Virus record (IMG/VR): IMGVR_UViG_3300045999_010033
Span: 62,001 to 126,000 of that record
DNA length: 64,000 nt
Strand: one strand, 5' to 3'
Part shown: positions 13,401 through 33,417 of the stretch, piece after piece
Layout: every line of letters begins with the position of its first letter
How positions within the stretch are numbered: position 1 is the first letter of the stretch
Notes under the pieces: model-generated
What the model was told of the DNA's origin: nothing
The model's database searches: none
What the model saw: only the letters and a program-made list of their open reading frames with translations
Program-made: the position numbers and the translations under genes

Positions 13401-13749
13401 CGATTTCATTGAGTGAAGATGCGACATCAATGAGAACAAAATCAACGTTTGTGGTAAGACCCAATTGTGTGTTTACATCCTTAATCTCACCTTTGTTAAA
13501 TCCAACAAATGAAGCATGAATTGTGTATGGTCCTCCGACTCTTGCAGCGGGAATTACATACACACCGGATTTGTTAGTGTTAGTAAAGTATTCAGTACCG
13601 GTAGGTGTGTGTGTTACATGGACACTTGCACCACTTAATACTTCACCTTTTGAGTTTTTTACAACACCGGAAATCGTTGATGTTGTAATTTGGCTAAAAC
13701 CCAACAAACTTGCTGCTACTAAAAGTAGCGTCATCATTGTTTTTTTCAT
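10474..13749 (-). CDS. Oar-like TonB-dependent receptor with N-terminal carboxypeptidase-regulatory-like domain
   Basis: Signal peptide; ISGVV...GGPYTI domain; NNFTIDG, GFTGAGINAVTRSGTN plug; PRFGFNWDV, RGGTGIFTGRPP, GDLNGD; ends QLGVRYIF. Confidence 0.92.
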   Translation of the reverse strand: MKKTMMTLLLVAASLLGFSQITTSTISGVVKNSKGEVLSGASVHVTHTPTGTEYFTNTNKSGVYVIPAARVGGPYTIHASFVGFNKGEIKDVNTQLGLTTNVDFVLIDVASSLNEIVVTGTRNPIFSKDRTGASQQFGRRELQSVPITGARTIDGVTKYTPFGNGASFGAQDSRMNNFTIDGSQFNNNFGLGSSAQAGGRTGASAISLDAIEQLQVNVAPYDVRQSGFTGAGINAVTRSGTNNIEGSVYGFTRDNSSKFVGNSAYGVPVTAAKFDEKVWGFRMGAPIIKNKLFIFGNYETLERTEPGTTWISEGSPLTGSQVSRVKYSDMKTLSEFMKSKFNYETGAWEGYSNTNESNKFLVRVDWNINPKHKLTARYVHHNSSAEINISNSQSAGAGNRTTQFNAMSFKNSGYIIMDNTRSAVVELNSKFTNTLHNNFIVGYDRQIEDRAYLSQMFPTIDIREGSATYTSVGFDPFTPGNKLNYGTFHITNNLTKYADKHTFTGGVNFEAYKSNNLFYPASNGVYIFNSLADFYNAANQSLANGGKPSTLAPARFQMRYSALSGGAEPMQVLETTRFDVYGQDAWDIRKDLKLTFGLRAAVIGIGNTALENKAVSAMAFANGEKFNTGVMPETQILWEPRFGFNWDVEGKKATQVRGGTGIFTGRPPYVFISNQVGNNGVLTGFIDVSGAAAAGYGFTANPAQYFTPITPTLPTTFDLAFTDPNYKFPQVWRSNLAVDQKLPWFGLVASAEVFYNKSLNAVHYYNANLESPVGTLSGSDNRAKFANNDPGTRINDNVSMAAVLTSKDGPYHKAMIVKLEKPYAKGLWGSVAYTLSEARDYMSAGSIASGSWQSARSVNGNNNLGLSLSDNNLPHRIVGLIGYRKEYGGKFGGATTVTLGYVGAKSNPFSYFVAGDLNGDRVRDNELVYVPKAAAEVKFAPLTVGSKTYTEVEQQTAFDAFILQDPYLSGRRGQYAERNGFVLPFLHRFDFSVMQDFYVKVKDQKNTFQVRFDILNAGNLMNDKWGVSQRATAPALLNFVSYNAAGEPTYRLSTQRNPDGSTILARDTYQRNSSVFDVWTAQLGVRYIFGK

Positions 13750-13830: not shown

Positions 13831-14370
13831 TTATAGTTCTTCATTGGATTTGGGCTCATAGTGCTTTTCGTTACGATTGCCTACTAATAGGAAAAAGCAA
13901 TTGAAGCATAGAGGTCTAATGTTGTCTAATATACGATTATTTAAATCACCATCCAAAAAATCTAATAACAATGGATATTTACCATCCGTTATTCGCGCTT
14001 CACTAAACCCGCAACAGCTGCAGACACGTGGTATGTATCCGCTATCAAACATTTTATTTTTGAATCGGTGTAGAGGATACTTTGGATGTTTTCCGTTAAT
14101 GAGGTCTTCAATGTGATATGAGCGATTCCGAATGTGTTTTTTTCTATCAATACCTATCCCTGCGGGGTTTTTTAGACGCTCCATGATTCCATACATTTTA
14201 GCATACTTTTTGTATGTATTGTATGATATTCCGAGTGTACGAGCTGCTTCTGCTGCCGATTTTGATTTTTCTTGGGCAGCGAGTATTTGTGATTCTAAAA
14301 TGGGCCTTGCGCCTAATCCCGGCTTTGTAATTCTAGTAATAACCGGCTTGTCTTGATTGGAATCCTCCAT
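13831..14370 (-). CDS. HTH + Zn-binding degenerate HNH-like protein
   Basis: SAAEAARTLGISYNTYKKY HTH; CSCCG ... LDFLDGDLNN...NIRPLCFNC with catalytic His replaced. Confidence 0.7.
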   Translation of the reverse strand: MEDSNQDKPVITRITKPGLGARPILESQILAAQEKSKSAAEAARTLGISYNTYKKYAKMYGIMERLKNPAGIGIDRKKHIRNRSYHIEDLINGKHPKYPLHRFKNKMFDSGYIPRVCSCCGFSEARITDGKYPLLLDFLDGDLNNRILDNIRPLCFNCFFLLVGNRNEKHYEPKSNEEL

Positions 14371-16526: not shown

Positions 16527-17399
16527 TTAAAATATTTCGTATTCAATTTCGGTATCTTTGAACCCCCAATTTTCATCGTTTTGAGATTCCGAAAACAATT
16601 CCACCCAATACCAAGCATCATTATACATAGGTGCTTTTGTTTCGGCTATTTCATGTAAATCTTCCACATTTCCTCCTTGTGGTAAGTGATTTTTATGAGA
16701 CATATGATACATTGGAATATCGTATATCGCTTTTAAGTTGTATCCATTAATAGCTACTTTTTTTTGAATATTCGTATCTACAAAGCAATTATATATCATA
16801 CCTTCTTCTGCTCCTTTGATACTTATCCATATTTTTTTAGAAGCTAATTGAAAATCTCCACAACAATTTATTATACTATAATTATCGTTTGGAGTTACTT
16901 TTGCAGAAAAATACCTTGCAGTTGTCACATTTCTTAAATATTCTCTATACTCTGATAAATTATCTATATTTTTAACCACCTCACTATATTCTATATCCCT
17001 TCTACTAAACGTATAAAATACATTTTCATCACTTCTTTTTATAAGTTCATCTAATTCCTTTTTTGTTGGAGGTATGTTATCAGTTGTTGTAACCGCAATC
17101 CAATCGGCATTCGTTCTTCTTAACGCTAAATTGATTGATAAGTTCGCAGATACATTAGGAACATTCGAATAATCATTGAATATAGTATTATGCACATTTG
17201 ATGATATAACAAAATGCTTTATTTTACCTTCGTGTGGTAACTCATCTATTACTTCATATAACAAACTGTGTGATGGTGAGTTCCAATCAATGTAATTAAC
17301 TTCATCAAATGTATCCAACAAAGCTTTCATATGAATTAAAAACCTTTCTTTTTCTTTATATCCATCGTTTCTACTAAATGTTATAACCGAAGTTTTCAT
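16527..17399 (-). CDS. GT-A fold glycosyltransferase-like protein
   Basis: SRND, IDWNS, INLALRR, TTTDN, GDFQL, YHMSH. Confidence 0.65.
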   Translation of the reverse strand: MKTSVITFSRNDGYKEKERFLIHMKALLDTFDEVNYIDWNSPSHSLLYEVIDELPHEGKIKHFVISSNVHNTIFNDYSNVPNVSANLSINLALRRTNADWIAVTTTDNIPPTKKELDELIKRSDENVFYTFSRRDIEYSEVVKNIDNLSEYREYLRNVTTARYFSAKVTPNDNYSIINCCGDFQLASKKIWISIKGAEEGMIYNCFVDTNIQKKVAINGYNLKAIYDIPMYHMSHKNHLPQGGNVEDLHEIAETKAPMYNDAWYWVELFSESQNDENWGFKDTEIEYEIF

Positions 17400-17411: not shown

Positions 17412-18194
17412 TTATATTGTTGATACACCTGGCTTTTGAACCACTATTGTTGCACATTCTTGCGCGAATTTAATTGCACTTTCTATATTAGAAGATAAAA
17501 TATATTCACAAACTAATCCAGATACAAAGGTATCACCTGCACCCGAAACATCTTTTATCTGAACTTTTTCAACTGGGTATATTTTTCCTTTATGCTGACA
17601 CCCCTTACTTGATAGTGTTATGATTAATTTATCTTCAATATCTAATTCTTTCAAAGAATATTCGGTGTGCTCATACTCCACATGATTTATCTTAATGTAT
17701 GTAGCACTTTTACACCAAGATCCTAATATTTTTTTTGTGTCTATAAACACATTTATATTGTTTTCACATATGAACCTAATATCTTCTTCTTCTAAAAACC
17801 CTTTATCATAATCACTAATAATAATTGCATCTATTTTAGTATCATTATAGATGTTGTTATTTATTTTTTTTAATGTTGAAGAATTTATCGGTGTGGCTTT
17901 ATCGTTAAAATCTACTCTAAGTAATATTTGTCCCGACCTTTCATCAACATATCTTTTTTTAATTATTTTGTTATCATTTTTAATAAAGATAACACTTACA
18001 CCCAGCGCTTCTAAATTGGAAACAACATTTCCTGCCATTCCATCATTCGAAGTTGTGTTGGTTGGATTGAATACTGGAACCGGCGCTTCGGGTGCCAATC
18101 TGATTGCAGTTCCATATACAAATTCATCTACTCCATAATCTCCTATAACCAATATACTGAAATCTTTAAATTTTTCCTTTTTCAAATTTTTCAT
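17412..18194 (-). CDS. HldE/RfaE-type heptose-7-phosphate kinase (PfkB family)
   Basis: RLAPEAPVPV, SDYDKG, DVSGAGDTF. Confidence 0.88.
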   Translation of the reverse strand: MKNLKKEKFKDFSILVIGDYGVDEFVYGTAIRLAPEAPVPVFNPTNTTSNDGMAGNVVSNLEALGVSVIFIKNDNKIIKKRYVDERSGQILLRVDFNDKATPINSSTLKKINNNIYNDTKIDAIIISDYDKGFLEEEDIRFICENNINVFIDTKKILGSWCKSATYIKINHVEYEHTEYSLKELDIEDKLIITLSSKGCQHKGKIYPVEKVQIKDVSGAGDTFVSGLVCEYILSSNIESAIKFAQECATIVVQKPGVSTI

Positions 18195-18744
18195 TTATTA
18201 TTTCCTTTGTTTTTTTGAATCCTATTTCACAATTCGTTTTCCAATGAGAGTGGTCGCCACCATCTGAAACCCATTTATACGCACTAAATTTAACACCATA
18301 TCTTTTACATACTTTTGCAATTGCAAAACACTCCATATCAATTATGGAACACCGCTTTATCATTTCCAAATAATATGGTGAATATTTTATTTTCTGATTT
18401 TCATCGTAAAAATAATCGGTTGTAAAACAACTAATATTAGATTTTGAATCTAAAACTATTTGTTTAGATATTGATTCAAATGGAGTTTTACCATACTCAT
18501 CTAATGGGGTAGTATCTATATCTTGATAAACCAATCCAACTTTGACCACGTCTCCAATGGGCAAAGATAACGATCCACATGAACCGATGTTTATTATTTC
18601 ATCATACCCCAAACTAAATGCCATAGTCGCGGTCATAGCGGCGTTTATTTTACCAACACCACTAAACATTACCGGATATCCTAAAATATTTCCTTGAATA
18701 CCTACTTCATCGGGAACTGCTACTATAAAAACCTTTTTATTCAT
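18166..18744 (-). CDS. mtnN: MTA/SAH nucleosidase-like protein
   Basis: SGVGKINAA, INIGSCG, DMECFA, KWVSD. Confidence 0.75.
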   Translation of the reverse strand: MNKKVFIVAVPDEVGIQGNILGYPVMFSGVGKINAAMTATMAFSLGYDEIINIGSCGSLSLPIGDVVKVGLVYQDIDTTPLDEYGKTPFESISKQIVLDSKSNISCFTTDYFYDENQKIKYSPYYLEMIKRCSIIDMECFAIAKVCKRYGVKFSAYKWVSDGGDHSHWKTNCEIGFKKTKEIINEKFEKGKI

Positions 18745-19213
18745 ATTTAATTAAACTCTTAACATTTGTTGGTTTGTGTAAAAATGTTAAATCAATTAAC
18801 ACTAATTTATCTACCACTTCGTAACCCGCCTTTTTACATAGTATTTCAACCGCCTCCATAGTTCCACCTGTCGCATACACATCATCAACTATAACTACCT
18901 TCCCACTTCCTGGTTGCATTTCTAATATATCCTCACCATATTCCAAAGTGTATGTTTGTTGAATTACCGGTGGTGGTAGTTTTCCTTTTTTTCTACACAT
19001 AATCAAACCACCATTTTTAGTAGATAACGCCGAAGCGAATATAAATCCTCTAGCATCAATACCTACCCAATAATCGGGTTGATTAACTAAATTTCTCATT
19101 TCTTCAATTACCTTTGGAAATAAAGATGATTTTAAAAGTGGAGAAACATCTTTGAACGATATTCCAGTTTTTGGAAAATCGGGTACTTCATTTACAAGTT
19201 CTTTCCAATTCAT
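18737..19213 (-). CDS. apt: adenine phosphoribosyltransferase
   Basis: PDFPKTGISFKD, GIDARGF, RKKGKLP, LEYG, IVDDVYATGGT. Confidence 0.93.
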   Translation of the reverse strand: MNWKELVNEVPDFPKTGISFKDVSPLLKSSLFPKVIEEMRNLVNQPDYWVGIDARGFIFASALSTKNGGLIMCRKKGKLPPPVIQQTYTLEYGEDILEMQPGSGKVVIVDDVYATGGTMEAVEILCKKAGYEVVDKLVLIDLTFLHKPTNVKSLIKYE

Positions 19214-19218
19214 TTTTT

Positions 19219-19698
19219 TTAATTTTTATCTCTTTGTGAAAGTATAGGAGTTTCGGTTGGCCAATTTATATTAATTTTTGAATCTTTCCAATTTAAACTG
19301 AATTGGTTTTCAACATCAGGGTATTCCCCTTCGTATGCCCATTTATAAAAAAATACAGCGTTATCACTTAACACTAAATGTCCATTTCCAAATCCAGGTG
19401 GGATTAATATTTGTTTTTTGTTTGCACCACTTAAAATTATACTATCCCATTTTAAATAAGTTGGGGATGTGGGTCTATTATCTACAACTACAAAATATAT
19501 TTCACCATGTAGACAACTTATTAATTTAGTAGCTTTGAAATCTCCATGAATTCCTCTTAACACATTTTTCTTTGAAACCGCAACTTTATCGTGATTAAAA
19601 AATAATTCGTGTTCACTTTGATTAAATACGGTGTACAATTCGCCCCTATAATCTTCAAACGAATCGGGCTGAAATATTTTAATTTCAGAAAATATCAT
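19219..19698 (-). CDS. rmlC: dTDP-4-dehydrorhamnose 3,5-epimerase family protein
   Basis: FEDYRG, VLRGIH, IPPGFGNGH, WP...LSQRD. Confidence 0.85.
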   Translation of the reverse strand: MIFSEIKIFQPDSFEDYRGELYTVFNQSEHELFFNHDKVAVSKKNVLRGIHGDFKATKLISCLHGEIYFVVVDNRPTSPTYLKWDSIILSGANKKQILIPPGFGNGHLVLSDNAVFFYKWAYEGEYPDVENQFSLNWKDSKININWPTETPILSQRDKN

Positions 19699-20860
19699 TG
19701 TTAAGTATGTTTATTAATTTATCAATTTTTTCTTCCTCCAACGTGGGATAGTTCCCAATGTACCAACCAAAATGATGGACGTGGTCTACATTTTTAAATT
19801 CATCATAATTAAACTTTCCTTTGAAAAACGGTTGTCTAATTTGATTTCCTCCACCTGATAATCCTCTCCTAAATTCGATTTTGTTATCGCTAAGAACTTT
19901 TTCAAGTTTATTTCTAATTTCGTATGAAGGTTCTTTTAAAATTACTATAAAAGCATAATTACATTGTCCCTCTACTTCTAAATTAGTTATATATTTTGTA
20001 GAATCTAATCTTTCTATAAAGTGATTGAAATTTCTAATTCTATTTATATTATTGTTATCGAGTTTTTTAAGTTGAGATAATCCGATAACTGCATTTAATT
20101 CGGTACTTCTGAAATTATGAGAAGGTCTAATGAATATGAAATCTTTATTTAAATCGGGATTTTCATTAATTATTTTTTGTTTAAATTCTTCATTACTCAT
20201 TTCTCGCATCATACCATGAGAACGTAGTGCTCTACATATTTGATAAAAATGCTCATCGTTAGTACATATCATTCCACCTTCTATTGTACTCATATGGTGC
20301 GCAAAGTAAAAACTAAAATTAGAAGCAAATCCAATTGAACCTACCTTTTGTCCTTTGAAAGTTGTACCATGTGATTCACAAACATCTTCAATTAATAATA
20401 TATTTCTTTCTTTACACAATTCAATTATGTCATCTGTCAATGCGTTTATTCCAAGCACGTGTGTAAGAAATATTGCTTTTGTTTTGGGATTTATTGCTGC
20501 TTTTAATTTATCCAAATCAAATGATAGATTTTTTAAATTAATATCAACAAACACCGGTTGAAATCCTGCAAACATTACCGATGCTACATCCGAAATCCAA
20601 GTTAATGGTGGAACTATAATTTCACCTTCACCATGAATGTAATTTAAAGCTAACATAGTTAATTCATTTGCCGATGCCCCTGAATTAACCATTAGATTGT
20701 ATTTTGTCCCTAACCAATCTCCCCATTTATTTTCAAACTCAATAACTTTTGGACCATTGGTTAATTTAGGAATTGGAGTTTGATTTAAAAAAGAAATCAG
20801 AGATTCAATATCCTCTTTATCTATATTATCACTCATTAATGGTAAGTAAAACTGATTCAT
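19685..20860 (-). CDS. DegT/DnrJ-family PLP enzyme, ColD/RfbH-like 3-dehydratase type
   Basis: VNSGASAN, EDVCESHG, SFYFAHHMSTIEGG (His in place of Schiff-base Lys); start moved to MNQFYLPLM. Confidence 0.85.
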   Translation of the reverse strand: MNQFYLPLMSDNIDKEDIESLISFLNQTPIPKLTNGPKVIEFENKWGDWLGTKYNLMVNSGASANELTMLALNYIHGEGEIIVPPLTWISDVASVMFAGFQPVFVDINLKNLSFDLDKLKAAINPKTKAIFLTHVLGINALTDDIIELCKERNILLIEDVCESHGTTFKGQKVGSIGFASNFSFYFAHHMSTIEGGMICTNDEHFYQICRALRSHGMMREMSNEEFKQKIINENPDLNKDFIFIRPSHNFRSTELNAVIGLSQLKKLDNNNINRIRNFNHFIERLDSTKYITNLEVEGQCNYAFIVILKEPSYEIRNKLEKVLSDNKIEFRRGLSGGGNQIRQPFFKGKFNYDEFKNVDHVHHFGWYIGNYPTLEEEKIDKLINILNNDIF

Positions 20861-20867
20861 ATTTATT

Positions 20868-21404
20868 TTATTTTTCTCCATAATAATCACCCCATTCAAC
20901 TAAAATGGTAGGGCGGTTGTCCGTTCTTTCATACGCGTACTGAAATGATTCAAATATCTGATGTGGTTCATCTAATCGTATTATATCAACCCAATCACAC
21001 ATTGCCTTAAATCCACCAGTAAAATCTGCTATGTGCTGATGTTGTGGGTGCAATGGTCTCTGAGACCCAATAGAAGTTCTAATGATTATTTTTGGTGTGT
21101 ATCCACCATCGGACATTATTTTAATTTTATCTAAATGATTAACCAACTGATTTGCTGCTAATAATAAAAAATTCCAACGTGGATAAATTGAAATGGGTAC
21201 AGTGCCATTCAGAGCCATACCTATGCTCATACCCATTTGCATATCTTCGTTAACCGGCATTTCTAACATTTTGTGAGGAGAAACATCTTTAAGAGTGTTT
21301 GTCATAGCAGTACCCGCGTATGTTACTGCTTGTCCTATAAAATATGTGTTTGGTTTTTCATTTAACCAATCCATTGATCTCTTTAGTTCATCAAAGTATT
21401 TCAT
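20868..21404 (-). CDS. TPP enzyme beta-like subunit (pyrimidine-binding domain only)
   Basis: EMPVNE, GMSIGMAL, NQLVN, PQH; no C-terminal domain. Confidence 0.8.
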   Translation of the reverse strand: MKYFDELKRSMDWLNEKPNTYFIGQAVTYAGTAMTNTLKDVSPHKMLEMPVNEDMQMGMSIGMALNGTVPISIYPRWNFLLLAANQLVNHLDKIKIMSDGGYTPKIIIRTSIGSQRPLHPQHQHIADFTGGFKAMCDWVDIIRLDEPHQIFESFQYAYERTDNRPTILVEWGDYYGEK

Positions 21405-21406
21405 AA

Positions 21407-22012
21407 TTAAAATTGTATTCTTTTACCTGCACCGGCGTGTGGATATTTTGTTTCGTATTGATAATATATTATTTTTCTAGTTTCATTTTTGAAGTATAAT
21501 TCACTATTCCATACTTCTTTTGTAAGAGTACACACCGATTTGCCATTATCTTCTATAACATAAGTTATTGGTAAATCGTGATTAACCGCATACTTCCAAT
21601 TTTCAAAGAATGTGCCGGTTTCGGATGTCATATCTCCTACAAAGCACCAAACATGATTTGCTTGTCCTTTACGTTTGATATCCAACGCCATACCGGTTGC
21701 GATAGGAATGTTGCCGGTTACAATGGCGGAGGAATAAATATTGTATTGTGGATAGCAAAGCGTAATAGATTTACCTTCTAAAATATCTTTCTTTACTTGT
21801 TCTTTAGGTACACCTTTGAGTAAACATTGATAATGAGAACGCCAAGTACAAAATACCCAATCGTCTGATTTTACATTTTGAAATATATTAATCATTTGAT
21901 CTTCATTTCCATAATATAAATGAATGGGAGATTTAATCATAGCATTGTTGAAACAATCCGCTATATCATCTTCAAAGGAAATTAATTCATCTTTAGTTAA
22001 AAGATTTCTCAT
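21407..22012 (-). CDS. TPP enzyme alpha-like subunit (E1-alpha/transketolase N-terminal type)
   Basis: PIHL, WRSH, SSAIV, FVGD...VIEDN TPP-binding motif. Confidence 0.85.
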   Translation of the reverse strand: MRNLLTKDELISFEDDIADCFNNAMIKSPIHLYYGNEDQMINIFQNVKSDDWVFCTWRSHYQCLLKGVPKEQVKKDILEGKSITLCYPQYNIYSSAIVTGNIPIATGMALDIKRKGQANHVWCFVGDMTSETGTFFENWKYAVNHDLPITYVIEDNGKSVCTLTKEVWNSELYFKNETRKIIYYQYETKYPHAGAGKRIQF

Positions 22013-23538
22013 TTTTGTATTATTTTTCTTTTCAATTTAACTTCTAGCATTTTATTAATATTATCAACTGCTACTTGTCCAAATTTAGATTTTATTTTTT
22101 GCAAAAAAGGTGGATAGGAATGATATTCTTCAAACGCTTTATCTCTAAATTCCAATATCTCTGCGGCATCTAATGTTTCGGTTGGTAGTGGTAATGTATC
22201 ATATCCGTGAAACGAATATCCTTCGTATGTATTTGGTAGGGGGATTCCATTCATAATTGCGTTTTTATATAGTTGACTTCCCGGTAATGCCATAGCTGCG
22301 TATGCATTCCATCCAAATGTACACAATTCTTTTGAAAAATCCAAAGTTTTTTGCATTGATTCTTTTGTATCTCCCGGTAATCCGAATATGTAGTTTGCCA
22401 TTACTTCAATATCGGCATCATGTACTTGCTGAATAACTTGTGATATATCTACATCTTCAAATTTTCCTTTAGATACTTCCAAACGAACCGTCTTATCTGC
22501 ACTTTCAATGCCGAGTGCCAACCACTTGATACCTGCTTCTCTTACCAATTTCAATAAATCAGGTCTTCTGACAGTATCAACTCTTGAATACGCCCACATT
22601 CTTAAAAATTTACCATATCCACGTTCCTTTAATAGTTCACACAATGGAACATAATATTTTCTATTCAATAAGAACATTTCATCTGTTATTTTAATAGTAT
22701 GAACTCCCAATTGAACGAGTTTATCAAACTCTTTAATAATAAATTCGGGGGACCAATATCGCATATTGCTGTAGTTGCCTGCGACACCTATCTCATCTTC
22801 ATCGTTTCTATTTAAAATGTTTATCATACAAAATTCACACGCAAATTGACAACCTAAAGATGTTTGAATGGCAGCGTATGGTGAACGTTTAGTTTGGTCG
22901 TATTCGGCGTGCCACATTGGAGCCCTATACAAATCAAGTGGGGTTTCTTTGTATGGGAGTAAATCCCACGCATATCCGGGTAAATCAGTATCCATTTTTT
23001 CATTGGGAACTATTTTTTCAGGTGGGTTTATTTTAATACCATCTTTACTTCTCCAAACTATACCTTTAATGTTCTCTAAATTATCTAAATCAATTTTCTC
23101 TTGAGATAAAACATTCAACAAAGCATAAACGCCTTCATTTGTAAATCCGAAATCTATCGAAGGTTCATCTTTTAAAGTTTTAACTGGAACTGCTTGTATA
23201 TAAGACCCTATGTATGAAATTGGAATTTGTAATTTTTTCTCTTTAAGAAAATTTGAAATATAAACTGCTCCACTCATGTTTACTGTCCCTGCATTCACAT
23301 TTTGACCATATACTACAAAGCATATTAACCTTGGATTTATGATTTTAATTCTATCAAAAATTTGTTCTCTATTTAATTTTTCAGCGTTTGCATCAATTAG
23401 TGATACGGTATATCCTTTGGCTCGGCACGCTTCTGCCAAAAGTAACGCCCAAGTTGGTGGCTCAATTGCCGCATAATCATTTGCCAAATCTTGGTATATA
23501 CCGGTTGCATTTCCCGGTGATATCAATAATACATCCAT
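22009..23538 (-). CDS. cobalamin-binding radical SAM enzyme
   Basis: N-terminal B12-type Rossmann domain; TSLGCQFACEFC; DEMF; LGIES; YIFGLPGDT. Confidence 0.9.
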   Translation of the reverse strand: MDVLLISPGNATGIYQDLANDYAAIEPPTWALLLAEACRAKGYTVSLIDANAEKLNREQIFDRIKIINPRLICFVVYGQNVNAGTVNMSGAVYISNFLKEKKLQIPISYIGSYIQAVPVKTLKDEPSIDFGFTNEGVYALLNVLSQEKIDLDNLENIKGIVWRSKDGIKINPPEKIVPNEKMDTDLPGYAWDLLPYKETPLDLYRAPMWHAEYDQTKRSPYAAIQTSLGCQFACEFCMINILNRNDEDEIGVAGNYSNMRYWSPEFIIKEFDKLVQLGVHTIKITDEMFLLNRKYYVPLCELLKERGYGKFLRMWAYSRVDTVRRPDLLKLVREAGIKWLALGIESADKTVRLEVSKGKFEDVDISQVIQQVHDADIEVMANYIFGLPGDTKESMQKTLDFSKELCTFGWNAYAAMALPGSQLYKNAIMNGIPLPNTYEGYSFHGYDTLPLPTETLDAAEILEFRDKAFEEYHSYPPFLQKIKSKFGQVAVDNINKMLEVKLKRKIIQK

Positions 23539-23545
23539 AATTTTT

Positions 23546-24487
23546 TTATAAATTTGTAAAATCTTTATTTTTAAATTTATTAATTAACTGATAACCTTTT
23601 ATTAGTTCCTGAATGCCATCTTCAAGTGTAAATGCAGGTTGCCATCCAAATGATTCTAGCTTAGAATTTGATACCATATAATTTCTTTGATCAAAATCTT
23701 GTTTAAAATTATTTTCAACTATTACTAAATCGGGAATAAATTTTTGAATTTTTTTAGCTAAATCTAATTTAGTACAATTAGCAGATGTCAAACCAACATT
23801 AAACGCATTATTGTTACATTTTTCATAGTTTTCAATCATAAACAAAAATGTATTTGCAATATCTCTGATATGAATGTAGTTGCGGATAAAGTGTGATTCA
23901 AAAAGAACCAAATATCCGTCGGTTAGTGCTTTATAAACAAAATCATTAACAAGTAAATCCATTCTCATTCTATAAGACATTCCAAACACGGTTGCCAATC
24001 TTAACGCAATACCATTACCCGAATCTAATACCGCCTTTTCTGCGTCACATTTTGTTTCTGCGTATAATGAAAGTGGTTTAAATGGAGATTCTTCAGTAAT
24101 AATTTCAGTTGAAGATCCATATTGAGAGTTAGTGTTTGGTATCAATACCATTTGATCATTGGTAATCCATTTAGTTATATTTTTTACTTGCTCATAATTA
24201 ACTTTAACTGTCAATTCGGGTTGTGCTTTACACGCAGGCATGCCCACTATGGCCGCCAATGGTATGATTATATCGTGGGAATTAACTAATGGTTTTAAAG
24301 TTGATACATCGGTTACATCCCCTAAAATAAAATTAAAATTTTGATGATACGCGAAGGGTGCGACCGATGTTTGTTTATAAATTAAATTATCAACAATTGT
24401 TACCACATATCCTTTATTCAATAAAACTTCTGTTAAAACAGACCCCAAATACCCCGCTCCTCCTGTAATTAATACTTTTTTCATCAT
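23546..24487 (-). CDS. NAD-dependent epimerase/dehydratase
   Basis: TGGAGYLG, LAAIVG, YAETK, RLATVFG. Confidence 0.92.
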   Translation of the reverse strand: MMKKVLITGGAGYLGSVLTEVLLNKGYVVTIVDNLIYKQTSVAPFAYHQNFNFILGDVTDVSTLKPLVNSHDIIIPLAAIVGMPACKAQPELTVKVNYEQVKNITKWITNDQMVLIPNTNSQYGSSTEIITEESPFKPLSLYAETKCDAEKAVLDSGNGIALRLATVFGMSYRMRMDLLVNDFVYKALTDGYLVLFESHFIRNYIHIRDIANTFLFMIENYEKCNNNAFNVGLTSANCTKLDLAKKIQKFIPDLVIVENNFKQDFDQRNYMVSNSKLESFGWQPAFTLEDGIQELIKGYQLINKFKNKDFTNL

Positions 24488-28804: not shown

Positions 28805-29218
28805 TTAAATTCCCGATAGATGTTTTGTTTTATCATAATTTAAAATTTGACTAGTTGATTTGTTTGGTACTCTGGAAAAATAAAATATATTAGGAATATA
28901 ATATCGCCCTATTATATTTTTATTTTTATAATCATCTCCTATAACCATTATATCCGGTGTGTATTCTTTTATTCTATCTATAAGTTCATTATCGGATGAA
29001 AATGTTACAATAGAATCTACATATTTAATTGAAGATAAGAATTTTATTCTATCTTTCAAAATATTATATGGACGATTTTCTCCTTTTTTTTCTTTAATTC
29101 TTTCATCGGTATCTAATCCAACTCTTACGTTTCCCAACGAATTAGCGTATTCAAGTAAGTTAATGTGTCCAATATGAAGAACATCAAACGAACCATTTAC
29201 CCAAACACGTTTTACCAT
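28805..29218 (-). CDS. HldE/RfaE domain II-type nucleotidyltransferase
   Basis: NGSFDVLHIGH, KGENRP, GDDY, STS. Confidence 0.85.
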   Translation of the reverse strand: MVKRVWVNGSFDVLHIGHINLLEYANSLGNVRVGLDTDERIKEKKGENRPYNILKDRIKFLSSIKYVDSIVTFSSDNELIDRIKEYTPDIMVIGDDYKNKNIIGRYYIPNIFYFSRVPNKSTSQILNYDKTKHLSGI

Positions 29219-29610
29219 GATATTTCCCAATCTTTAAAATCTGCAGCCAAACAATCAATCTTATAATCCTTTCTGCCTCCCATAACTTCTTGAATTTTGT
29301 TTTTAGCAGTATTACGAATGCCATTCAATCCATGTGTTAGTTCAAGATTATTACCATCTTTAATTCCTTTACGATAGTTGGATTCGTTGTGCCAAATATG
29401 AAGATTCATTTGTGATAAAACCACTATTGCTCGGATTGTTTCGGCTGTAATTGGTTCTTTTGTTTCATTCAAATATAATTGAATATCGTGCACAATATCT
29501 GCAATTTCTTTTGCATACTCATCTTTGTGTTCGGCAATAAACACTTCTTTCAATTGAATAATAGATAATCTATCTATTAGTTCACTTAATGTTGGTAAAT
29601 ACTTTCTCAT
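29212..29610 (-). CDS. helical protein of glycan clusters (DUF4254/DUF6165-like)
   Basis: ELIDRLSI..LK, NLHIWHNE, NGIRNTAKNKI. Confidence 0.55.
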   Translation of the reverse strand: MRKYLPTLSELIDRLSIIQLKEVFIAEHKDEYAKEIADIVHDIQLYLNETKEPITAETIRAIVVLSQMNLHIWHNESNYRKGIKDGNNLELTHGLNGIRNTAKNKIQEVMGGRKDYKIDCLAADFKDWEISW

Positions 29611-30233
29611 AATGTTTCGTAATAAGAGTTTTGTTTTTCTTGTCTTTTTATATCCTTATCGTGCTTTATGCAGAATAATGGTTCTGCGGGGAAGTTGCTG
29701 TATTTTTGATAACCGTATACCCTTTCATGTACTTTGTTTTTCCAAAGTATTTCATCCTTTCTTTTATATAATCGGGTTTGATAATCTGGAAAATTGACCC
29801 ACCCACGTTCGTTTACATTCCATCCCCATTTTTTTATATGGTAATCGGTAAGACCGGTTACCGTATTAATACGTGGAATAAAAAATAGGTCAACATCATC
29901 ATTATCATTTAGGATATCCTCTAAATTAACCATCAATTCGGCATCAATCATTTCATCTGCATCTATTTGATAAATCCAATCACCCTTACAATGTGAATTG
30001 AGAAAGTTTTTCCAAGATGAAAAATCTCCATTAAATTCAGAAATGATAAGAGTAAAATCGTCTTTACCATCTGCGCATATCATCAAAAATTCCTCTAACT
30101 CTTTTGGTGCTTTTGGTGAATCCAATAGAACAACTATTTCCGCGTTATCTCCCTTATAGTTTTTAAGGTGATTGATTAATCTAATCGTTTCATCAAATTC
30201 ATTTGAAACTGTGATAGCGTAACTTATTTTCAT
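29607..30233 (-). CDS. family 2 glycosyltransferase
   Basis: ISYAITVSNE, QIDADE, PDYQTRL, VHE. Confidence 0.85.
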   Translation of the reverse strand: MKISYAITVSNEFDETIRLINHLKNYKGDNAEIVVLLDSPKAPKELEEFLMICADGKDDFTLIISEFNGDFSSWKNFLNSHCKGDWIYQIDADEMIDAELMVNLEDILNDNDDVDLFFIPRINTVTGLTDYHIKKWGWNVNERGWVNFPDYQTRLYKRKDEILWKNKVHERVYGYQKYSNFPAEPLFCIKHDKDIKRQEKQNSYYETL

Positions 30234-30239
30234 TAAAAC

Positions 30240-30722
30240 TTATTTTTTACTTTTAGGTTCTACTTTTGGCTTTGGTTTTGCCTTTTGAATTAATTTTGAT
30301 TTAGGCACTATTTTTTCTACTTCCATTTTTAATTCTAAAATACGTGTAATTCCACTCAATTTATAAGTTCTATATGCATTATTATTAATTGATGGTACTT
30401 TTTTTACAGAATCATTATACGTGTTTCTCGCACTTCCTTTTATTTCTAATTTTTCAGTTTGTTCGTTATATAATTTGCCAAACATTCTTTTAACTATATT
30501 GGGACTAACATTGGATACTTTTACACAATGGACTATATCTTTTGTTTTTGATACAAACAATGTGTAAACAATTGGTGCTTCCATATCCCGATATTTTACT
30601 CTATCTCCATCGGTGTATTTATATTCTTTAATAAGATAAAATTTATTTCGTTCCATTTTTTGTGGAAGAATGATGTTTTTATCATTTATAAATGGTTTAT
30701 ATTTTAGATTATATTCCGACAT
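30240..30722 (-). CDS. hypothetical protein, weak resemblance to T4 gp2-like DNA end protector
   Basis: FYLIKEYKY ... PIVY ... AYRTY pattern; function uncertain. Confidence 0.4.
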   Translation of the reverse strand: MSEYNLKYKPFINDKNIILPQKMERNKFYLIKEYKYTDGDRVKYRDMEAPIVYTLFVSKTKDIVHCVKVSNVSPNIVKRMFGKLYNEQTEKLEIKGSARNTYNDSVKKVPSINNNAYRTYKLSGITRILELKMEVEKIVPKSKLIQKAKPKPKVEPKSKK

Positions 30723-30724
30723 TT

Positions 30725-32038
30725 TTAAGAATCAATTTTTGGCAATTCTAATTTTTTAAGTTTTGGTAGTTCTATTTTTTTGAGATTAGGTAGTTGTAGC
30801 TTTACAGCTTTCGGCTCTACACTCCTGTCATAAATAGAATATTTTTTGAATATTCCGTCCAATTCTTGTGTCATTTTTGAAAGGGTAAAATTTGCTCTAT
30901 TGTATTCTCCCAACTTTTCAGAATCCTTTTTATACTTTTCGTAATTCTTATATACATCTTTTAGTTTGATAGTCGCGTTAGAAACATTTACATTAAACCA
31001 GCTTGATTCTTTTAAAAGAAAATCATCTGCGGCAGATTCGTGCACGTTTTTCAATTCCCCTTCAAGTAAAACTGCTCCTTCTTTTAAGAAATCTAAATGC
31101 CCACTCCAATTTGATGCAATTACGGGTTTGCCAGTTAAAGAAAACTCTAAAAGTGGGCGACCAAATCCTTCACCTTTTGTGAAAGATACCATTGCTTTTA
31201 TTTTTTTATGATTATAAAGTCCGTTCATTTGTTTTGCCGAAAGGTCACCATGTAACAAATACACTGGAACTTTACCATAATCAGAACCTAACGCGTTTTT
31301 AATACTACGAACAATGTGCTCCCTATCCCGCACACTAAATGATGCGGTTGATGTTTTCAAAATTAACGCAGGTTTTACCTTTTCATTTTTAAATGCTAAA
31401 GAAAAAGTTTTAAGTAGTATTCCTACATTTTTACGATCTTCACCCACATTACCTTTCAACCAATGTCCTACGAATAAAAAAGCAAAATCTTCTTTTATTT
31501 CATCCAATTCAGAAACTTTTTGTATATCTTTTGTGGCAAAATCATTTTCATCGTAACCTTCAAAAAGAATTTCAACTGGCTTTTCTATTTGATGATTTCT
31601 TATAAATTGTTGTGTATCACGATTATGTTCGGAGTATATACTTTCGATTAGTGAACGCTTTGAATGTTCCGAAACTGTGATTATCAAATCCATTCGATTA
31701 CATCCTTGTATCCAACTTAGTGGGGATATAGTGGTTTCTATTGCCGCAGTTACACCAATATTATAATGACCTATTGGTTGAAATTCATTTGGAACTGTCA
31801 TTTGTATGAAGATATCCGGTTTTCTTTCTGGTGCAGGTACTACATTATCTATAATCCATTTGTGAAAGGCATTTTCATATGAAAGTGCATCCATTGGGGT
31901 TTGTCCCCACCTAGTAGAAATAATCTTTACTTCAAATTTATCCAATTTCCAAATGGAATGTAATAAATCTCGTGCATGGTCTCCATACCCGCTGCGTGTC
32001 GCTATTGGTGCTTGATATAACAATGTTGGTTTACTCAT
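30725..32038 (-). CDS. family 4 (GT-B) glycosyltransferase
   Basis: RSGYG, DRKN, GEGFGRPLLE, PVIASNWSG. Confidence 0.88.
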   Translation of the reverse strand: MSKPTLLYQAPIATRSGYGDHARDLLHSIWKLDKFEVKIISTRWGQTPMDALSYENAFHKWIIDNVVPAPERKPDIFIQMTVPNEFQPIGHYNIGVTAAIETTISPLSWIQGCNRMDLIITVSEHSKRSLIESIYSEHNRDTQQFIRNHQIEKPVEILFEGYDENDFATKDIQKVSELDEIKEDFAFLFVGHWLKGNVGEDRKNVGILLKTFSLAFKNEKVKPALILKTSTASFSVRDREHIVRSIKNALGSDYGKVPVYLLHGDLSAKQMNGLYNHKKIKAMVSFTKGEGFGRPLLEFSLTGKPVIASNWSGHLDFLKEGAVLLEGELKNVHESAADDFLLKESSWFNVNVSNATIKLKDVYKNYEKYKKDSEKLGEYNRANFTLSKMTQELDGIFKKYSIYDRSVEPKAVKLQLPNLKKIELPKLKKLELPKIDS

Positions 32039-33417
32039 ATACTATACAATTCAAATTTTTTCTTTGGTTTCCAATTTTCAAATGTAGATTCGATTCCATC
32101 AATAAGTGTTTGGCACATATTTTGTGTGCTCAATCCACCATCACCCATCATCCATTCTCTGCCATTCAATCCCCATGCTTTCCTTTGCCATTTGGGCATT
32201 AAATACCAATAACGAATAAGTGGTGCCACATCATCAAAATCTACTTTATCATCAAAAATATATGGTGTTGGTACGGATCCATTTACAGAACGAGTTGGCC
32301 ATACCGGTGTTACCCATTCTCCCCAAGTTACTGCTGATTCATAATTCTTTTTATCATGCAAAGACCCAATCTTTACATAGTCTTCTGCCGTTAGATACTT
32401 ATCGGTCCCTTTTAATTTAAAACCACATTGGTCTTGCAATCCACCAGTAACGTTTACAATGATAGGAGTTCCGGCCATTACCGATTCTGCGGTTGCTAAT
32501 CCAAATCCTTCATTAGATGCTAAATTGATTGTTACATCCGCAATATTGTATAGATAATTGAGCTCGGTTTCTGTCCATCTCCCATCATCAAAGATTACAT
32601 GGGCATCCGGCATACAATGTTGTACCATTGTTGGTAAATCAGTTCCATTTTCATCAACTGGCTGAGTGTGCATCAACATACATACTCTATCTCTTTTTTC
32701 TTCAGGTAATCCTAATCTGAATTGTTCGAATGCAAGTAACGCATCCATTGGTTGCTTTCTTCTAATGTTTCTATTATTCCAATACAATATAAAATCGTAT
32801 TCTTTATCTCCTAAAATCTTTTTTCTAAATTCTTCAGGAACATCAATCGGCTTGTATAAATCGGGATTAATACCATGCGGCACATAACTAACTTGCCAAT
32901 CTTTTGGTTGCTTCCATTGTGATTGTGCATCCCATCCCCACACACGACGTGTTATACCATATGTTTGCTTTGAAATACATCCAATCCAATCACAACTTTC
33001 ATAGTAATCACGATTATATTTTGGATCTGGCAAATCATCCCAAATATGATAAAACAACAATGGAACTGATTGGCGAATTTCATGTTCAATATCATACAAC
33101 CATATCCAATATCGTGGGTCAGTAAAGTGTAGAATGGCATCTGGCTTTTCTCGCATCAATAACGCACGAATTATATCCGCGTTACCGTAACCATCACACG
33201 GATACAACTTTACATTAGCATCCTGTACCCCAGTTACATCACGTACACTTTGGGTTAAATCCATTATTTGACCTTGCTCTGGGTGTTGTATCGCTGCTCC
33301 CAATTGAACCCAATCATATTTATCGACCGTACCTAAAACCAATTGTTTTGAAATGTTAGCAATGCCAGATGGCATTCTTAAATCATCGGAAAGTAACAAA
33401 ATTTTCTTTTTAGCCAT
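32035..33417 (-). CDS. family 4 (GT-B) glycosyltransferase
   Basis: VPHG, NRNIRRK, NEGFGLATAES, GTPII. Confidence 0.88.
   Translation of the reverse strand: MAKKKILLLSDDLRMPSGIANISKQLVLGTVDKYDWVQLGAAIQHPEQGQIMDLTQSVRDVTGVQDANVKLYPCDGYGNADIIRALLMREKPDAILHFTDPRYWIWLYDIEHEIRQSVPLLFYHIWDDLPDPKYNRDYYESCDWIGCISKQTYGITRRVWGWDAQSQWKQPKDWQVSYVPHGINPDLYKPIDVPEEFRKKILGDKEYDFILYWNNRNIRRKQPMDALLAFEQFRLGLPEEKRDRVCMLMHTQPVDENGTDLPTMVQHCMPDAHVIFDDGRWTETELNYLYNIADVTINLASNEGFGLATAESVMAGTPIIVNVTGGLQDQCGFKLKGTDKYLTAEDYVKIGSLHDKKNYESAVTWGEWVTPVWPTRSVNGSVPTPYIFDDKVDFDDVAPLIRYWYLMPKWQRKAWGLNGREWMMGDGGLSTQNMCQTLIDGIESTFENWKPKKKFELYSI

What the first reader, a model, noticed from the sequence alone, without database searches (positions are those of the whole stretch)
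19219..24487. Sub-pathway for a branched or deoxy sugar: B12 radical SAM, minimal split TPP enzyme, ColD-like dehydratase, RmlC, SDR
The DegT-family protein has His instead of the Schiff-base Lys (SFYFAHH), the hallmark of ColD/RfbH 3-deoxygenases. The TPP enzyme is reduced to 201 + 178 aa with no C-terminal domain or E2/E3 partners, consistent with C-C branching of a keto-sugar rather than pyruvate dehydrogenase. B12 radical SAM enzymes catalyse C-methylation or ring contraction. The combined product is not one I can name.
Basis: partly seen in the sequence, partly recalled or inferred. Interest (0 to 1): 0.62.

Follow-up and report, generated by a model that had tools for sequence, protein, structure and literature searches.

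The report
Phage-borne pathway for a modified heptose
A large lake-water phage carries a tightly conserved enzyme set, also found in Nitrospira, Verrucomicrobiota, SAR11 and Herbaspirillum, that most likely turns a seven-carbon sugar nucleotide into a 3-deoxy, carbon-branched or carbocyclic sugar that nobody has yet characterised.

Summary
The DegT protein is ColD-like, with His in place of the Schiff-base Lys. The ThDP enzyme is a minimal split E1-like pair with no C-terminal domains. The radical SAM protein has an N-terminal B12-binding-type domain.

Three points change the picture:
- The window is part of a 221-kb lake phage, not a bacterium.
- The substrate is a heptose, not a 6-deoxyhexose. 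The SDR scores 345 bits against PDB 6vo6, which I recall to be Cj1427, the GDP-heptose C4-dehydrogenase. The "RmlC" is closest to the Campylobacter GDP-4-keto-heptose epimerases. RfaE-like kinase and nucleotidyltransferase genes flank the block.
- The module (rSAM, ThDP pair, ColD-like, Cj1427-like) is conserved in 23 phage contigs and about 80 bacterial loci, usually beside hddA and hddC.

[quoted passage not shown] The product is unknown. By retro-biosynthesis, a caryose-type 4,8-cyclo-3,9-dideoxynonose fits all four enzymes, and caryose biosynthesis is unsolved. The rival reading is C-methylation by the rSAM enzyme. I found no paper describing the module.

The parts
23546..24487 (-). Cj1427-like SDR: predicted NDP-D-glycero-D-manno-heptose C4-dehydrogenase
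   Evidence: 345 bits, residues 1-307 of 313, to PDB 6vo6. I recall 6vo6 as Cj1427; the entry title and length agree. The Y-x3-K motif is kept. Identity across 23 phage loci is 53-90%, 84-90% in most. Co-located in 58 of 80 bacterial loci.
22009..23538 (-). Radical SAM enzyme with an N-terminal B12-binding-type domain (class-B-like)
   Evidence: Pfam Radical_SAM 66 bits and B12-binding 31.8 bits. CxxxCxxC is present. Best NCBIfam hits are HpnJ 116 bits and BchE 90 bits, both far below their cut-offs. Best PDB hit is AprD4, 46 bits. It is the only rSAM gene in the phage.
21407..22012 (-). ThDP enzyme, PP (diphosphate-binding) subunit; minimal E1-alpha-like
   Evidence: E1_dh positions 7-180 of 300. 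The G126-D127...N156 ThDP-Mg motif is invariant in 49 homologues. phrog_34187 positions 7-198 of 405.
20868..21404 (-). ThDP enzyme, PYR subunit; minimal E1-beta-like without the C-terminal domain
   Evidence: Transket_pyr only. The catalytic Glu in PVxE[ED]xQMG is kept in 105 of 105 homologues. phrog_34187 positions 237-405 of 405, so the two subunits are fused in other phages.
19685..20899 (-). ColD-like PLP/PMP-dependent sugar 3-dehydratase (likely start near 20860)
   Evidence: ColD 2gms 183 bits, against 122-126 bits for the Fe-S E1 dehydrases 3bb8 and 3bcx. His replaces the Schiff-base Lys, and AHH is kept in 82 of 82 homologues.
19219..19698 (-). Cupin epimerase of the GDP-4-keto-heptose 3- or 3,5-epimerase group
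   Evidence: 165-169 bits to 7m14, 8db5, 8dcl, 8dco and 7ang (C. jejuni GDP-D-glycero-4-keto-D-lyxo-heptose epimerases), against 92 bits to true dTDP RmlC.
18737..19213 (-). Adenine phosphoribosyltransferase
   Evidence: NF002636 164 bits, over its cut-off of 125. Conserved beside the block in most phage loci.
18166..18744 (-). MTA/SAH/5'-deoxyadenosine nucleosidase-like protein
   Evidence: PNP_UDP_1 60 bits. NCBIfam nucleosidase models score 53-62 bits, below their cut-offs. Conserved in the phage loci. A role in clearing radical SAM by-products is inferred.
17412..18194 (-). RfaE-domain-I-like heptose-7-phosphate kinase
   Evidence: TIGR02198 139 bits, below its cut-off. The homologous 'carbohydrate kinase' sits beside the fused ThDP gene in cyanophages S-SM2 and P-TIM68.
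16527..17399 (-). Phage GT2-like glycosyltransferase
   Evidence: No Pfam hit. Atlas feature search scores 0.99 to phage clusters that carry Glycos_transf_2. Conserved in the phage loci.
24491..25225 (-). Class I SAM methyltransferase (variable accessory gene)
   Evidence: Methyltransf_24 and Methyltransf_31. Present in only some phage loci.
25259..26152 (-). GT10 (fucosyltransferase-like) glycosyltransferase
   Evidence: Glyco_transf_10, 24 bits. Present in most phage loci.
26152..28741 (-). Variable accessory genes: an unknown 291-aa protein, a GFO/IDH/MocA oxidoreductase and an FAD oxidoreductase
   Evidence: Present in only a subset of phage loci.
28805..29230 (-). RfaE-domain-II-like sugar-1-phosphate nucleotidyltransferase
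   Evidence: TIGR02199 94 bits, below its cut-off. CTP_transf_like 52 bits.
29212..29610 (-). Phage-only 132-aa protein of unknown function; the most conserved protein of the cluster
   Evidence: 84-95% identity in most phage loci that carry it (50% in L018). No Pfam, PHROG or NCBIfam family. Only phage clusters in the Atlas.
29607..33417 (-). GT2, an unknown 160-aa protein and two GT1 glycosyltransferases (diverged)
   Evidence: Only 32-52% identity across phage loci, against 70-93% for the rSAM, ThDP and ColD-like genes.

Best explanation
The block is the core of a phage-encoded auxiliary pathway that remodels a nucleotide-activated D-glycero-D-manno-heptose.

Proposed steps:
1. The Cj1427-like SDR oxidises C4.
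2. The ColD-like PMP enzyme removes the 3-OH, giving an NDP-3-deoxy-4-keto-heptose.
3. The cupin epimerase adjusts C3 and/or C5.
4. The minimal alpha/beta ThDP enzyme decarboxylates a 2-oxo acid, most simply pyruvate, and adds the resulting acyl anion to the sugar carbonyl at C4. This is the same logic as YerE in yersiniose and as the E1-like pairs AviB1/B2 and Pau11/12.
5. The radical SAM enzyme then finishes the sugar. My preferred guess is that it abstracts H from C7 and closes a C7-C8 bond onto the new acetyl carbonyl, giving a caryose-type 4,8-cyclo-3,9-dideoxynonose. The alternative is C-methylation.
6. The neighbouring nucleosidase and Apt clear and salvage 5'-deoxyadenosine and SAH.
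7. The RfaE-like kinase and nucleotidyltransferase feed heptose in.
8. The soluble glycosyltransferases put the product on an unidentified acceptor in the infected cell.

Shown: gene content, catalytic motifs, homologies, conservation and co-occurrence with heptose genes. Inferred: every reaction, their order, the nucleotide (GDP or ADP), the donor acid, the rSAM chemistry and the acceptor.
For: - Heptose substrate, from the enzymes. The SDR scores 345 bits to 6vo6. The epimerase scores 165-169 bits to the named GDP-4-keto-heptose epimerases, against 92 bits to RmlC.
- Heptose substrate, from the neighbours. RfaE domain I and II homologues lie in the cluster.
- Heptose substrate, from the bacterial loci. 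Of 80 loci, 67 carry HddA-like, 55 HddC-like, 15 GmhA and 15 GmhB genes.
- Precedent for the first steps. Cj1427 plus a PLP C3-dehydratase makes GDP-3-deoxy-4-keto-heptose in vitro (PMC10680097).
- Catalytic competence. His is kept in 82 of 82 ColD-likes. GD...N is kept in the PP subunit. The PYR Glu is kept in 105 of 105. CxxxCxxC is present.
- The ThDP pair is one enzyme. It is fused in cyanophages and in PHROG 34187.
- The ThDP genes lie directly next to the ColD-like gene in most loci.
- Strong purifying selection. In the phage loci the rSAM, ThDP and ColD-like proteins are 70-93% identical and the SDR 84-90% in most (53-71% in seven), while the GTs are 32-52%.
- No reductase in the minimal sets. 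All 13 phage loci with at least 7 kb on both sides have rSAM, ColD-like and Cj1427-like genes but no GFS-like reductase, as do 13 bacterial loci. The 4-keto group must therefore be consumed non-reductively.
- Precedent for the ThDP step. E1-like pairs install C2 branches on 4-keto sugars (PMC4425429), and YerE acts on a 3-deoxy-4-keto sugar (PMC9306805).
- Cyclisation guess. The best rSAM family hits are HpnJ and BchE, both linked to carbocycle formation rather than methylation (PMC9092360). The caryose skeleton equals heptose, minus 3-OH, plus a C2 unit at C4, plus a C7-C8 bond. Its biosynthesis is reported as unknown.
Against: - No biochemical data exist for any of these proteins.
- All rSAM family hits are far below their cut-offs, and most characterised class-B enzymes are methyltransferases.
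- In 21 of 52 well-flanked bacterial loci a GDP-fucose-synthase-like C4-reductase/epimerase (407 bits) sits inside the module. That is easier to explain if C4 stays a ketone until the end, which would mean the ThDP enzyme acts elsewhere.
- The phage's activating enzymes are of the ADP-beta-heptose (RfaE) type, whereas Cj1427 uses GDP-alpha-heptose.
- The identity of 6vo6 as Cj1427 is from memory. The paper could not be fetched.
- I could not test whether the caryose producer Trinickia caryophylli carries the module, because genome names were hidden.
Confidence: 0.5

Rival explanations
1. The pathway is the same up to the ThDP step, but the radical SAM enzyme is a cobalamin-dependent C-methyltransferase. 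The product would be an open-chain, C-methylated 3-deoxy-4-C-acetyl or 4-C-(1-hydroxyethyl) heptose.
For: The domain architecture is class B. The B12-binding domain is over its cut-off in orthologues. Most characterised class-B enzymes methylate (general knowledge). A nucleosidase that would remove both SAH and 5'-dAdo is encoded next door. Many bacterial loci carry both the rSAM and a GFS-like reductase that could reduce the acetyl group.
Against: The known methylase families (KedN5-type, TsrM, HpnR, PhpK) score lower than HpnJ and BchE. Phage, SAR11 and Verrucomicrobiota loci have no reductase, so the product would stay a ketone. The SAR11 single-cell genomes show no other protein over the B12-binding cut-off, apart from one ORF.
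Confidence: 0.3
2. C4 is not the branching site. Cj1427-like, ColD-like and a reductase or epimerase simply make an NDP-3-deoxy-heptose. The rSAM (acting like the AprD4 diol-dehydratase) and the ThDP pair instead remodel or extend the exocyclic C6-C7 diol, for example dehydration to a carbonyl followed by C2 addition, giving a linear higher sugar.
For: The best solved rSAM relative is the diol-dehydratase AprD4. A GFS-like C4-reductase is present in 21 of 52 well-flanked bacterial loci that carry the full set. ThDP carboligases usually prefer aldehyde acceptors (general knowledge).
Against: The AprD4 match is weak (46 bits) and covers only the rSAM core. The phage sets lack any C4-reductase. 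The ThDP genes sit next to the ColD-like gene in most loci. In Massilia the ThDP pair occurs without the rSAM enzyme.
Confidence: 0.12
3. One reading: a colitose or yersiniose-like pathway on an NDP-4-keto-6-deoxyhexose. The SDR would be the reductase or 4,6-dehydratase and RmlC the usual 3,5-epimerase.
For: ColD itself acts on GDP-4-keto-6-deoxymannose. The generic Pfam names fit.
Against: The SDR and the epimerase are far closer to the heptose enzymes than to Gmd, RmlB, GFS or RmlC. No 4,6-dehydratase or hexose-1-P nucleotidyltransferase is present in the phage. Heptose genes co-occur in phages and bacteria.
Confidence: 0.05

Closest known systems
Campylobacter jejuni capsular GDP-heptose modification enzymes (Cj1427 C4-dehydrogenase, Cj1430/MlghB/DdahB epimerases, HS:5 PLP C3-dehydratase)
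   Same: Three of the six proteins have their best solved or characterised relatives here. The in-vitro combination of Cj1427 and the C3-dehydratase gives the 3-deoxy-4-keto-heptose that I propose as the intermediate (PMC10680097).
   Different: C. jejuni finishes with a C4-reductase and has no described ThDP or radical SAM step. The phage lacks that reductase and uses an RfaE-type rather than an HddA/HddC-type activation pair.
ColD (GDP-4-keto-6-deoxy-D-mannose 3-dehydratase, colitose pathway)
   Same: Same fold. His replaces the internal-aldimine Lys. No Fe-S or E3 partner. 183 bits.
   Different: The likely substrate carries C6-OH and C7. The next enzyme is not ColC but a ThDP enzyme.
PDH-E1-like pairs that install two-carbon branches on 4-keto sugars (AviB1/AviB2 in avilamycin; Pau11/Pau12 in paulomycose)
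   Same: E1 alpha/beta-type ThDP enzymes, not part of a dehydrogenase complex, sitting in a sugar pathway (PMC4425429).
   Different: Those are full-length (325 and 345 aa). Here each subunit is a single domain of 201 or 178 aa. The hosts are actinomycete antibiotic clusters, not phage or LPS clusters. Direct sequence relatedness was not tested.
YerE/ErwE-type ThDP carboligases (yersiniose, erwiniose, caryophyllose)
   Same: They act on an NDP-3-deoxy-4-keto sugar made by a PMP-dependent 3-dehydrase, and they form a tertiary alcohol at C4 (PMC9306805).
   Different: They belong to a different ThDP superfamily branch: single-chain acetolactate-synthase-like flavoenzymes.
HpnJ, calditol synthase and PtmC (radical SAM enzymes linked to cyclopentane formation from sugars), and class-B rSAM methylases
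   Same: HpnJ is the best family hit and aligns almost end to end. Same B12-domain plus rSAM architecture.
   Different: 116 bits against a cut-off of 578, so it is not an HpnJ orthologue. The substrate and context are different.
Cyanophage 'transketolase central region-containing protein' (S-SM2 SSM2_198, P-TIM68; PHROG 34187)
   Same: Homologous ThDP enzyme (about 39% identity) next to the same kinase and nucleotidyltransferase types and a gene annotated as phosphoheptose isomerase.
   Different: It is fused into one roughly 400-aa chain. No ColD-like, rSAM or Cj1427-like partner was detected there. Its function is unannotated.

Membership tests
ColD-type PLP/PMP sugar 3-dehydratase (DegT family) | DegT/aspartate-aminotransferase-type fold | tested here: met
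   PF01041 242 bits. ColD structures score 177-183 bits over residues 20-398.
ColD-type PLP/PMP sugar 3-dehydratase (DegT family) | His in place of the Schiff-base Lys | tested here: met
   FYFAHH aligns to ColD FYSHH, the position that reads N or K in the mutant entries 3b8x and 2r0t. AHH is kept in 82 of 82 module homologues.
ColD-type PLP/PMP sugar 3-dehydratase (DegT family) | C3-deoxygenation of an NDP-4-keto sugar | not testable with these tools
   Needs an enzyme assay.
E1/RfbH-type Fe-S 3-dehydrase (needs the E3 reductase) | Equivalog-level similarity to RfbH | tested here: not met
   NF011936 210 bits against a cut-off of 423. 3bb8 and 3bcx score 122-126 bits, below ColD.
Cj1427-type NDP-heptose C4-dehydrogenase | Full-length close similarity to the solved enzyme, with the SDR Tyr/Lys | tested here: met
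   345 bits, residues 1-307 of 313, to 6vo6, with Y-x3-K aligned. The identity of 6vo6 as Cj1427 is from memory.
Cj1427-type NDP-heptose C4-dehydrogenase | Oxidation of GDP-heptose with alpha-ketoglutarate recycling of bound NADH | not testable with these tools
   Needs an enzyme assay.
GDP-4-keto-heptose 3- or 3,5-epimerases (Cj1430, MlghB, DdahB) | Closer to these than to dTDP RmlC | tested here: met
   165-169 bits against 92 bits. TIGR01221 rmlC scores 121 bits, below its cut-off of 156.
2-oxo acid dehydrogenase complex E1 (alpha2beta2) | PP domain with the GDG-type ThDP-Mg motif and PYR domain with the catalytic Glu | tested here: met
2-oxo acid dehydrogenase complex E1 (alpha2beta2) | Full-length alpha subunit and beta C-terminal (Transketolase_C) domain | tested here: not met
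   E1_dh covers only 7-180 of 300. There is no Transketolase_C in the protein or the phage. PDH E1 equivalog scores are 45-90 bits against cut-offs of 321-394.
2-oxo acid dehydrogenase complex E1 (alpha2beta2) | E2 partner | tested here: not met
   No 2-oxoacid_dh domain in the 221-kb phage record. E3 was not searched for.
Class B (cobalamin-dependent) radical SAM enzymes | CxxxCxxC radical SAM core | tested here: met
Class B (cobalamin-dependent) radical SAM enzymes | N-terminal B12-binding domain | tested here: inconclusive
   31.8 bits against a cut-off of 32.1 in the window protein. 32-42 bits, over the cut-off, in SAR11 orthologues. Cobalamin binding itself is untestable here, and the best solved relative, AprD4, works without B12 as far as I recall.
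HpnJ (hopanoid cyclitol-ether rSAM) | Equivalog score and hopanoid gene context | tested here: not met
   116 bits against a cut-off of 578. No hpn genes nearby.
YerE-type ThDP flavoenzyme | Single-chain TPP_enzyme_N/M/C architecture | tested here: not met
   Only a weak partial TPP_enzyme_C hit of 22 bits. The architecture is split E1-like.

The most novel reading that the evidence does not exclude
The module is the long-sought route to caryose-type carbocyclic higher sugars. A minimal E1-like ThDP enzyme puts a pyruvate-derived acetyl group on C4 of NDP-3-deoxy-4-keto-heptose. An HpnJ-like radical SAM enzyme then closes C7 onto the acetyl carbonyl, giving a 4,8-cyclo-3,9-dideoxynonose with no reductase needed. 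Abundant lake phages would then carry this pathway to decorate an unidentified target during infection.
Probability: 0.18. Interest if true: 0.85.

Novelty: new variant of a known kind. Interest (0 to 1): 0.68.

Why it matters
If the reading is right, a compact enzyme set extends the known GDP-heptose toolbox by two reaction types not yet described for heptoses: ThDP carboligation by a two-domain minimal E1-like enzyme, and a radical SAM finishing step.

The set is widespread. It occurs in Nitrospira, Verrucomicrobiota, SAR11, Oxalobacteraceae, cyanobacteria and many lake phages, so an unrecognised sugar may be common on environmental cell surfaces and may matter in phage-host recognition.

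It also gives a concrete, cheap test for the unsolved biosynthesis of caryose. The roughly 380-aa ThDP enzyme could be a useful small carboligase for making tertiary alcohols.

Tried and rejected
- DNA search of the block against cultured phages: no match.
- Protein search of the rSAM in cultured phages: only a 23%-identity hit in Streptomyces phage SF3.
- ThDP subunit against plasmids: none.
- An Enterobacteriaceae version of the module against 5,426 E. coli genomes: none, so no link to a solved E. coli O-antigen.
- Erwiniose and caryophyllose as products: rejected, because they are explained by YerE-like enzymes with long donor acids (PMC9306805).
- Bradyrhizose: the one paper read names no ThDP or rSAM gene in its cluster. 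Not pursued.
- Herbaspirillum lusitanum glycan literature: nothing useful.
- Literature searches combining heptose, radical SAM, thiamine and cobalamin: no paper on this module.
- Test for the module in Trinickia caryophylli: not possible. A sample of 401 Burkholderiales genomes gave 4 hits, but names are hidden. None of four hit genomes or Massilia G002 has a true RfbH.
- The alignment of 49 sequences was too diverse for the locus scan, so a smaller one was used.
- The Cj1427 structure paper (PMC7509852) is not held.

Full report
**What is in the window.** Bases 19219-24487 hold six contiguous minus-strand ORFs.

- The Pfam and NCBIfam matches are listed under the observation check.
In the HMMER alignment to ColD (2gms, 183 bits) the first His falls on the ColD position that reads N or K in the mutant entries 3b8x and 2r0t.
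- The Fe-S-dependent E1 dehydrases score lower, at 122-126 bits, and the RfbH equivalog model is missed (210 against 423 bits). The protein is therefore ColD-type, not E1-type.
- The radical SAM protein has the CxxxCxxC motif.

**The genome is a phage.**

- Every gene in the 64-kb window is on one strand.
- The sugar cluster lies between a family-B DNA polymerase, clamp-loader genes and a PD-(D/E)XK nuclease on one side, and a thymidylate-synthase-like gene and TonB-receptor-like genes on the other.
- The polymerase is 48.6% identical to that of Microcystis phage Mel-JY01.
- The window is positions 62001-126000 of a 221,095-bp IMG/VR virus record rated complete.
- Near-identical DNA occurs in lake-water metagenomes from at least eight studies.

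**The sugar is a heptose.**

- The SDR scores 345 bits over its whole length to PDB 6vo6. [quoted passage not shown] The structure paper is cited in PMC10680097, but I could not open it.
- The "RmlC" scores 165-169 bits to the solved C. jejuni GDP-D-glycero-4-keto-D-lyxo-heptose 3- and 3,5-epimerases, and only 92 bits to true dTDP RmlC.
- The cluster encodes an RfaE-domain-I-like kinase (139 bits) and an RfaE-domain-II-like nucleotidyltransferase (94 bits).
- The phage has no hexose-type NTP_transferase and no GmhA. It presumably draws heptose 7-phosphate from the host.
- Raushel's group has already shown that Cj1427 plus the HS:5 PLP C3-dehydratase makes GDP-D-glycero-3-deoxy-4-keto-heptose in vitro (PMC10680097).

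**The ThDP enzyme.**

- The 201-aa protein covers only the PP domain of E1-alpha. G126-D127...N156 is invariant in 49 relatives.
- The 178-aa protein covers only the PYR domain of E1-beta. Its cofactor-activating Glu is kept in 105 of 105 homologues.
- The phage has no Transketolase_C domain and no E2.
- Both halves match one 405-position PHROG of unknown function. Cyanophages S-SM2 and P-TIM68 encode a fused homologue of roughly 400 aa. There it lies beside a homologous carbohydrate kinase, a nucleotidyltransferase and a gene annotated as phosphoheptose isomerase. The two proteins are therefore one enzyme, and the enzyme travels with heptose genes.
- The family is large. It has 115 clusters at 50% identity with E below 1e-30, and most members are about 200 aa.
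- Some members carry inteins, and one is fused to an APH-type kinase.
- Database names are generic.

**Conservation.**

- In 23 IMG/VR contigs the order SDR, rSAM, PP, PYR, ColD-like, epimerase is kept. The rSAM, ThDP and ColD-like proteins are 70-93% identical and the SDR 84-90% in most loci (53-71% in seven). The flanking glycosyltransferases are only 32-52% identical. Cassettes are sometimes inserted between the rSAM and PP genes.
- A scan of one genome per bacterial species returned 80 loci with the PP subunit at 54-77% identity (mostly 55-62%). They come from Nitrospira, Verrucomicrobiota, Pelagibacteraceae single-cell genomes, Herbaspirillum, Massilia, Spirulina and others.
- By tblastn with the Herbaspirillum proteins, 78 of these loci also carry the PYR subunit, 69 the ColD-like gene, 58 the Cj1427-like SDR and 53 the rSAM gene. 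In addition 67 have an HddA-like kinase, 55 an HddC-like guanylyltransferase, and 15 each have GmhA and GmhB (the window proteins give 68, 60 and 53 for ColD, SDR and rSAM).
- In Herbaspirillum lusitanum all of these lie in one run next to rmlBAC and GT1 genes, which looks like an O-antigen-type locus.
- The module is rare within any one order: 4 of 401 sampled Burkholderiales genomes.
- In a tree of the rSAM proteins the phage sequences form one clade. Its nearest clearly cellular neighbours are Pelagibacteraceae (99% support).

**Mechanism.** What follows is inference.

- A ColD-type enzyme leaves a 3-deoxy-4-keto sugar. That is exactly the acceptor type used by YerE in yersiniose biosynthesis (PMC9306805).
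- E1-like alpha/beta pairs (AviB1/B2, Pau11/12) are the other known way to put a pyruvate-derived C2 unit on a 4-keto sugar (PMC4425429).
- The ThDP genes lie directly next to the ColD-like gene in most loci.
- All 13 well-flanked phage loci, and 13 bacterial ones, contain no GFS-like reductase. No other reductase is encoded in the minimal phage sets. C-C bond formation at C4 is the most economical reading.
- For the rSAM step, the best family matches are HpnJ and BchE. HpnJ, calditol synthase and PtmC are the rSAM enzymes proposed to make cyclopentane rings from sugars (PMC9092360).
- Adding a C2 unit at C4 of a 3-deoxyheptose and joining C7 to the new carbonyl carbon gives the constitution of caryose, 4,8-cyclo-3,9-dideoxynonose. 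Both tertiary alcohols and the C9 methyl group are accounted for, and no reductase is needed. The review states that its biosynthetic origin is unknown.
- This is an attractive guess, not a result.

**Evidence against, and rivals.**

- Methylation is the commoner class-B chemistry and remains a strong rival.
- Of the 52 well-flanked bacterial loci, 21 carry the full set together with a GDP-fucose-synthase-like enzyme (407 bits) inside the module. That fits a late C4 reduction better, and so fits a ThDP or rSAM attack on the C6-C7 side chain. The best solved rSAM relative is the diol-dehydratase AprD4, though weakly at 46 bits.
- Massilia has the module without the rSAM gene, so that step is a late, optional tailoring step.
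- The adjacent nucleosidase and Apt are phage-specific additions. They fit removal and salvage of 5'-deoxyadenosine and SAH.

**What the phage does with the sugar is open.** None of the 29 cluster proteins has a predicted membrane segment, and there is no flippase or polymerase. The five or so glycosyltransferases probably act in the cytoplasm on virion proteins, on DNA or on a host intermediate.

**Limits.**

- No reaction was tested.
- The nucleotide carrier is uncertain, because the activation genes are of the ADP type while the tailoring enzymes resemble GDP-sugar enzymes.
- Cobalamin dependence is unproven. The B12-binding score is borderline here and over the cut-off in orthologues.
- The complex prediction could not be run.
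- The caryose producer could not be searched.
- No literature on the module was found in the held library.

Noticed in passing
window 7124-9376 and 10474-13749 (- strand): The phage encodes two TonB-dependent-receptor-like outer-membrane proteins. One has Plug plus OMP_b-brl_3. The other has CarboxypepD_reg plus OMP_b-brl_4, a SusC-like architecture. This is unusual cargo for a phage and a possible clue to the host.
   Followed up: no
window 1096-2211 (- strand): The thymidylate-synthase-family protein is 371 aa, but the match spans the 266-position model end to end. It therefore carries about 100 extra residues as insertions. It could be a variant pyrimidine-modifying enzyme.
   Followed up: no
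window 29212-29610 (- strand): This 132-aa protein has no family and occurs only in phages. It is the most conserved protein of the whole cluster, at 84-95% identity in most phage loci that carry it (50% in L018). Its function is unexplained.
   Followed up: partly
proteins P0143, P0153, P0186 (relatives of window 21407-22012): Some ThDP PP-subunit homologues contain inteins. In P0143 the Intein_splicing domain begins right after the residues that align to 5-125 of the window protein, just before the GDM cofactor motif. P0153 has a LAGLIDADG domain. P0186 is fused to an APH-family kinase.
   Followed up: partly
L023 11518-19133; also L005, L020, L002, L014-L016 between the rSAM and PP genes: Related phages have cassettes inserted inside the module. 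The L023 cassette encodes a 3-dehydroquinate-synthase-like sugar-phosphate cyclase, an SDR, a methyltransferase and a PhyH-type dioxygenase, and a GHMP kinase follows the PYR gene. This hints at cyclitol or further heptose chemistry.
   Followed up: partly
genomes G004, G405-G408 (Pelagibacteraceae single-cell genomes holding L103, L095, L104, L092, L091): In these SAR11 genomes the module's rSAM is the only ORF over the B12-binding Pfam cut-off, apart from one 608-aa ORF. It is odd for a lineage that, as I recall, does not depend on cobalamin. Either B12 is scavenged for this enzyme or the domain does not bind it.
   Followed up: partly
L062 / genome G002 (Massilia sp. LXY-6): This genome carries the ThDP pair, ColD-like, Cj1427-like, GFS-like and all four GDP-heptose genes, but has no rSAM homologue anywhere at E <= 1e-20. 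It is a natural pre-rSAM comparator.
   Followed up: yes
window 13831-14370 (- strand): An HNH-endonuclease-like ORF lies at the edge of the sugar cluster.
   Followed up: no
L028, L030, L031 (MAG contigs labelled Caulobacter, Bacteroidales, Parcubacteria): These bins hold module copies at 67-85% identity to the phage ThDP subunits. In the rSAM tree L030 and L031 sit at the base of the phage clade (L028 has no rSAM copy). They are probably phage contigs binned by mistake.
   Followed up: partly
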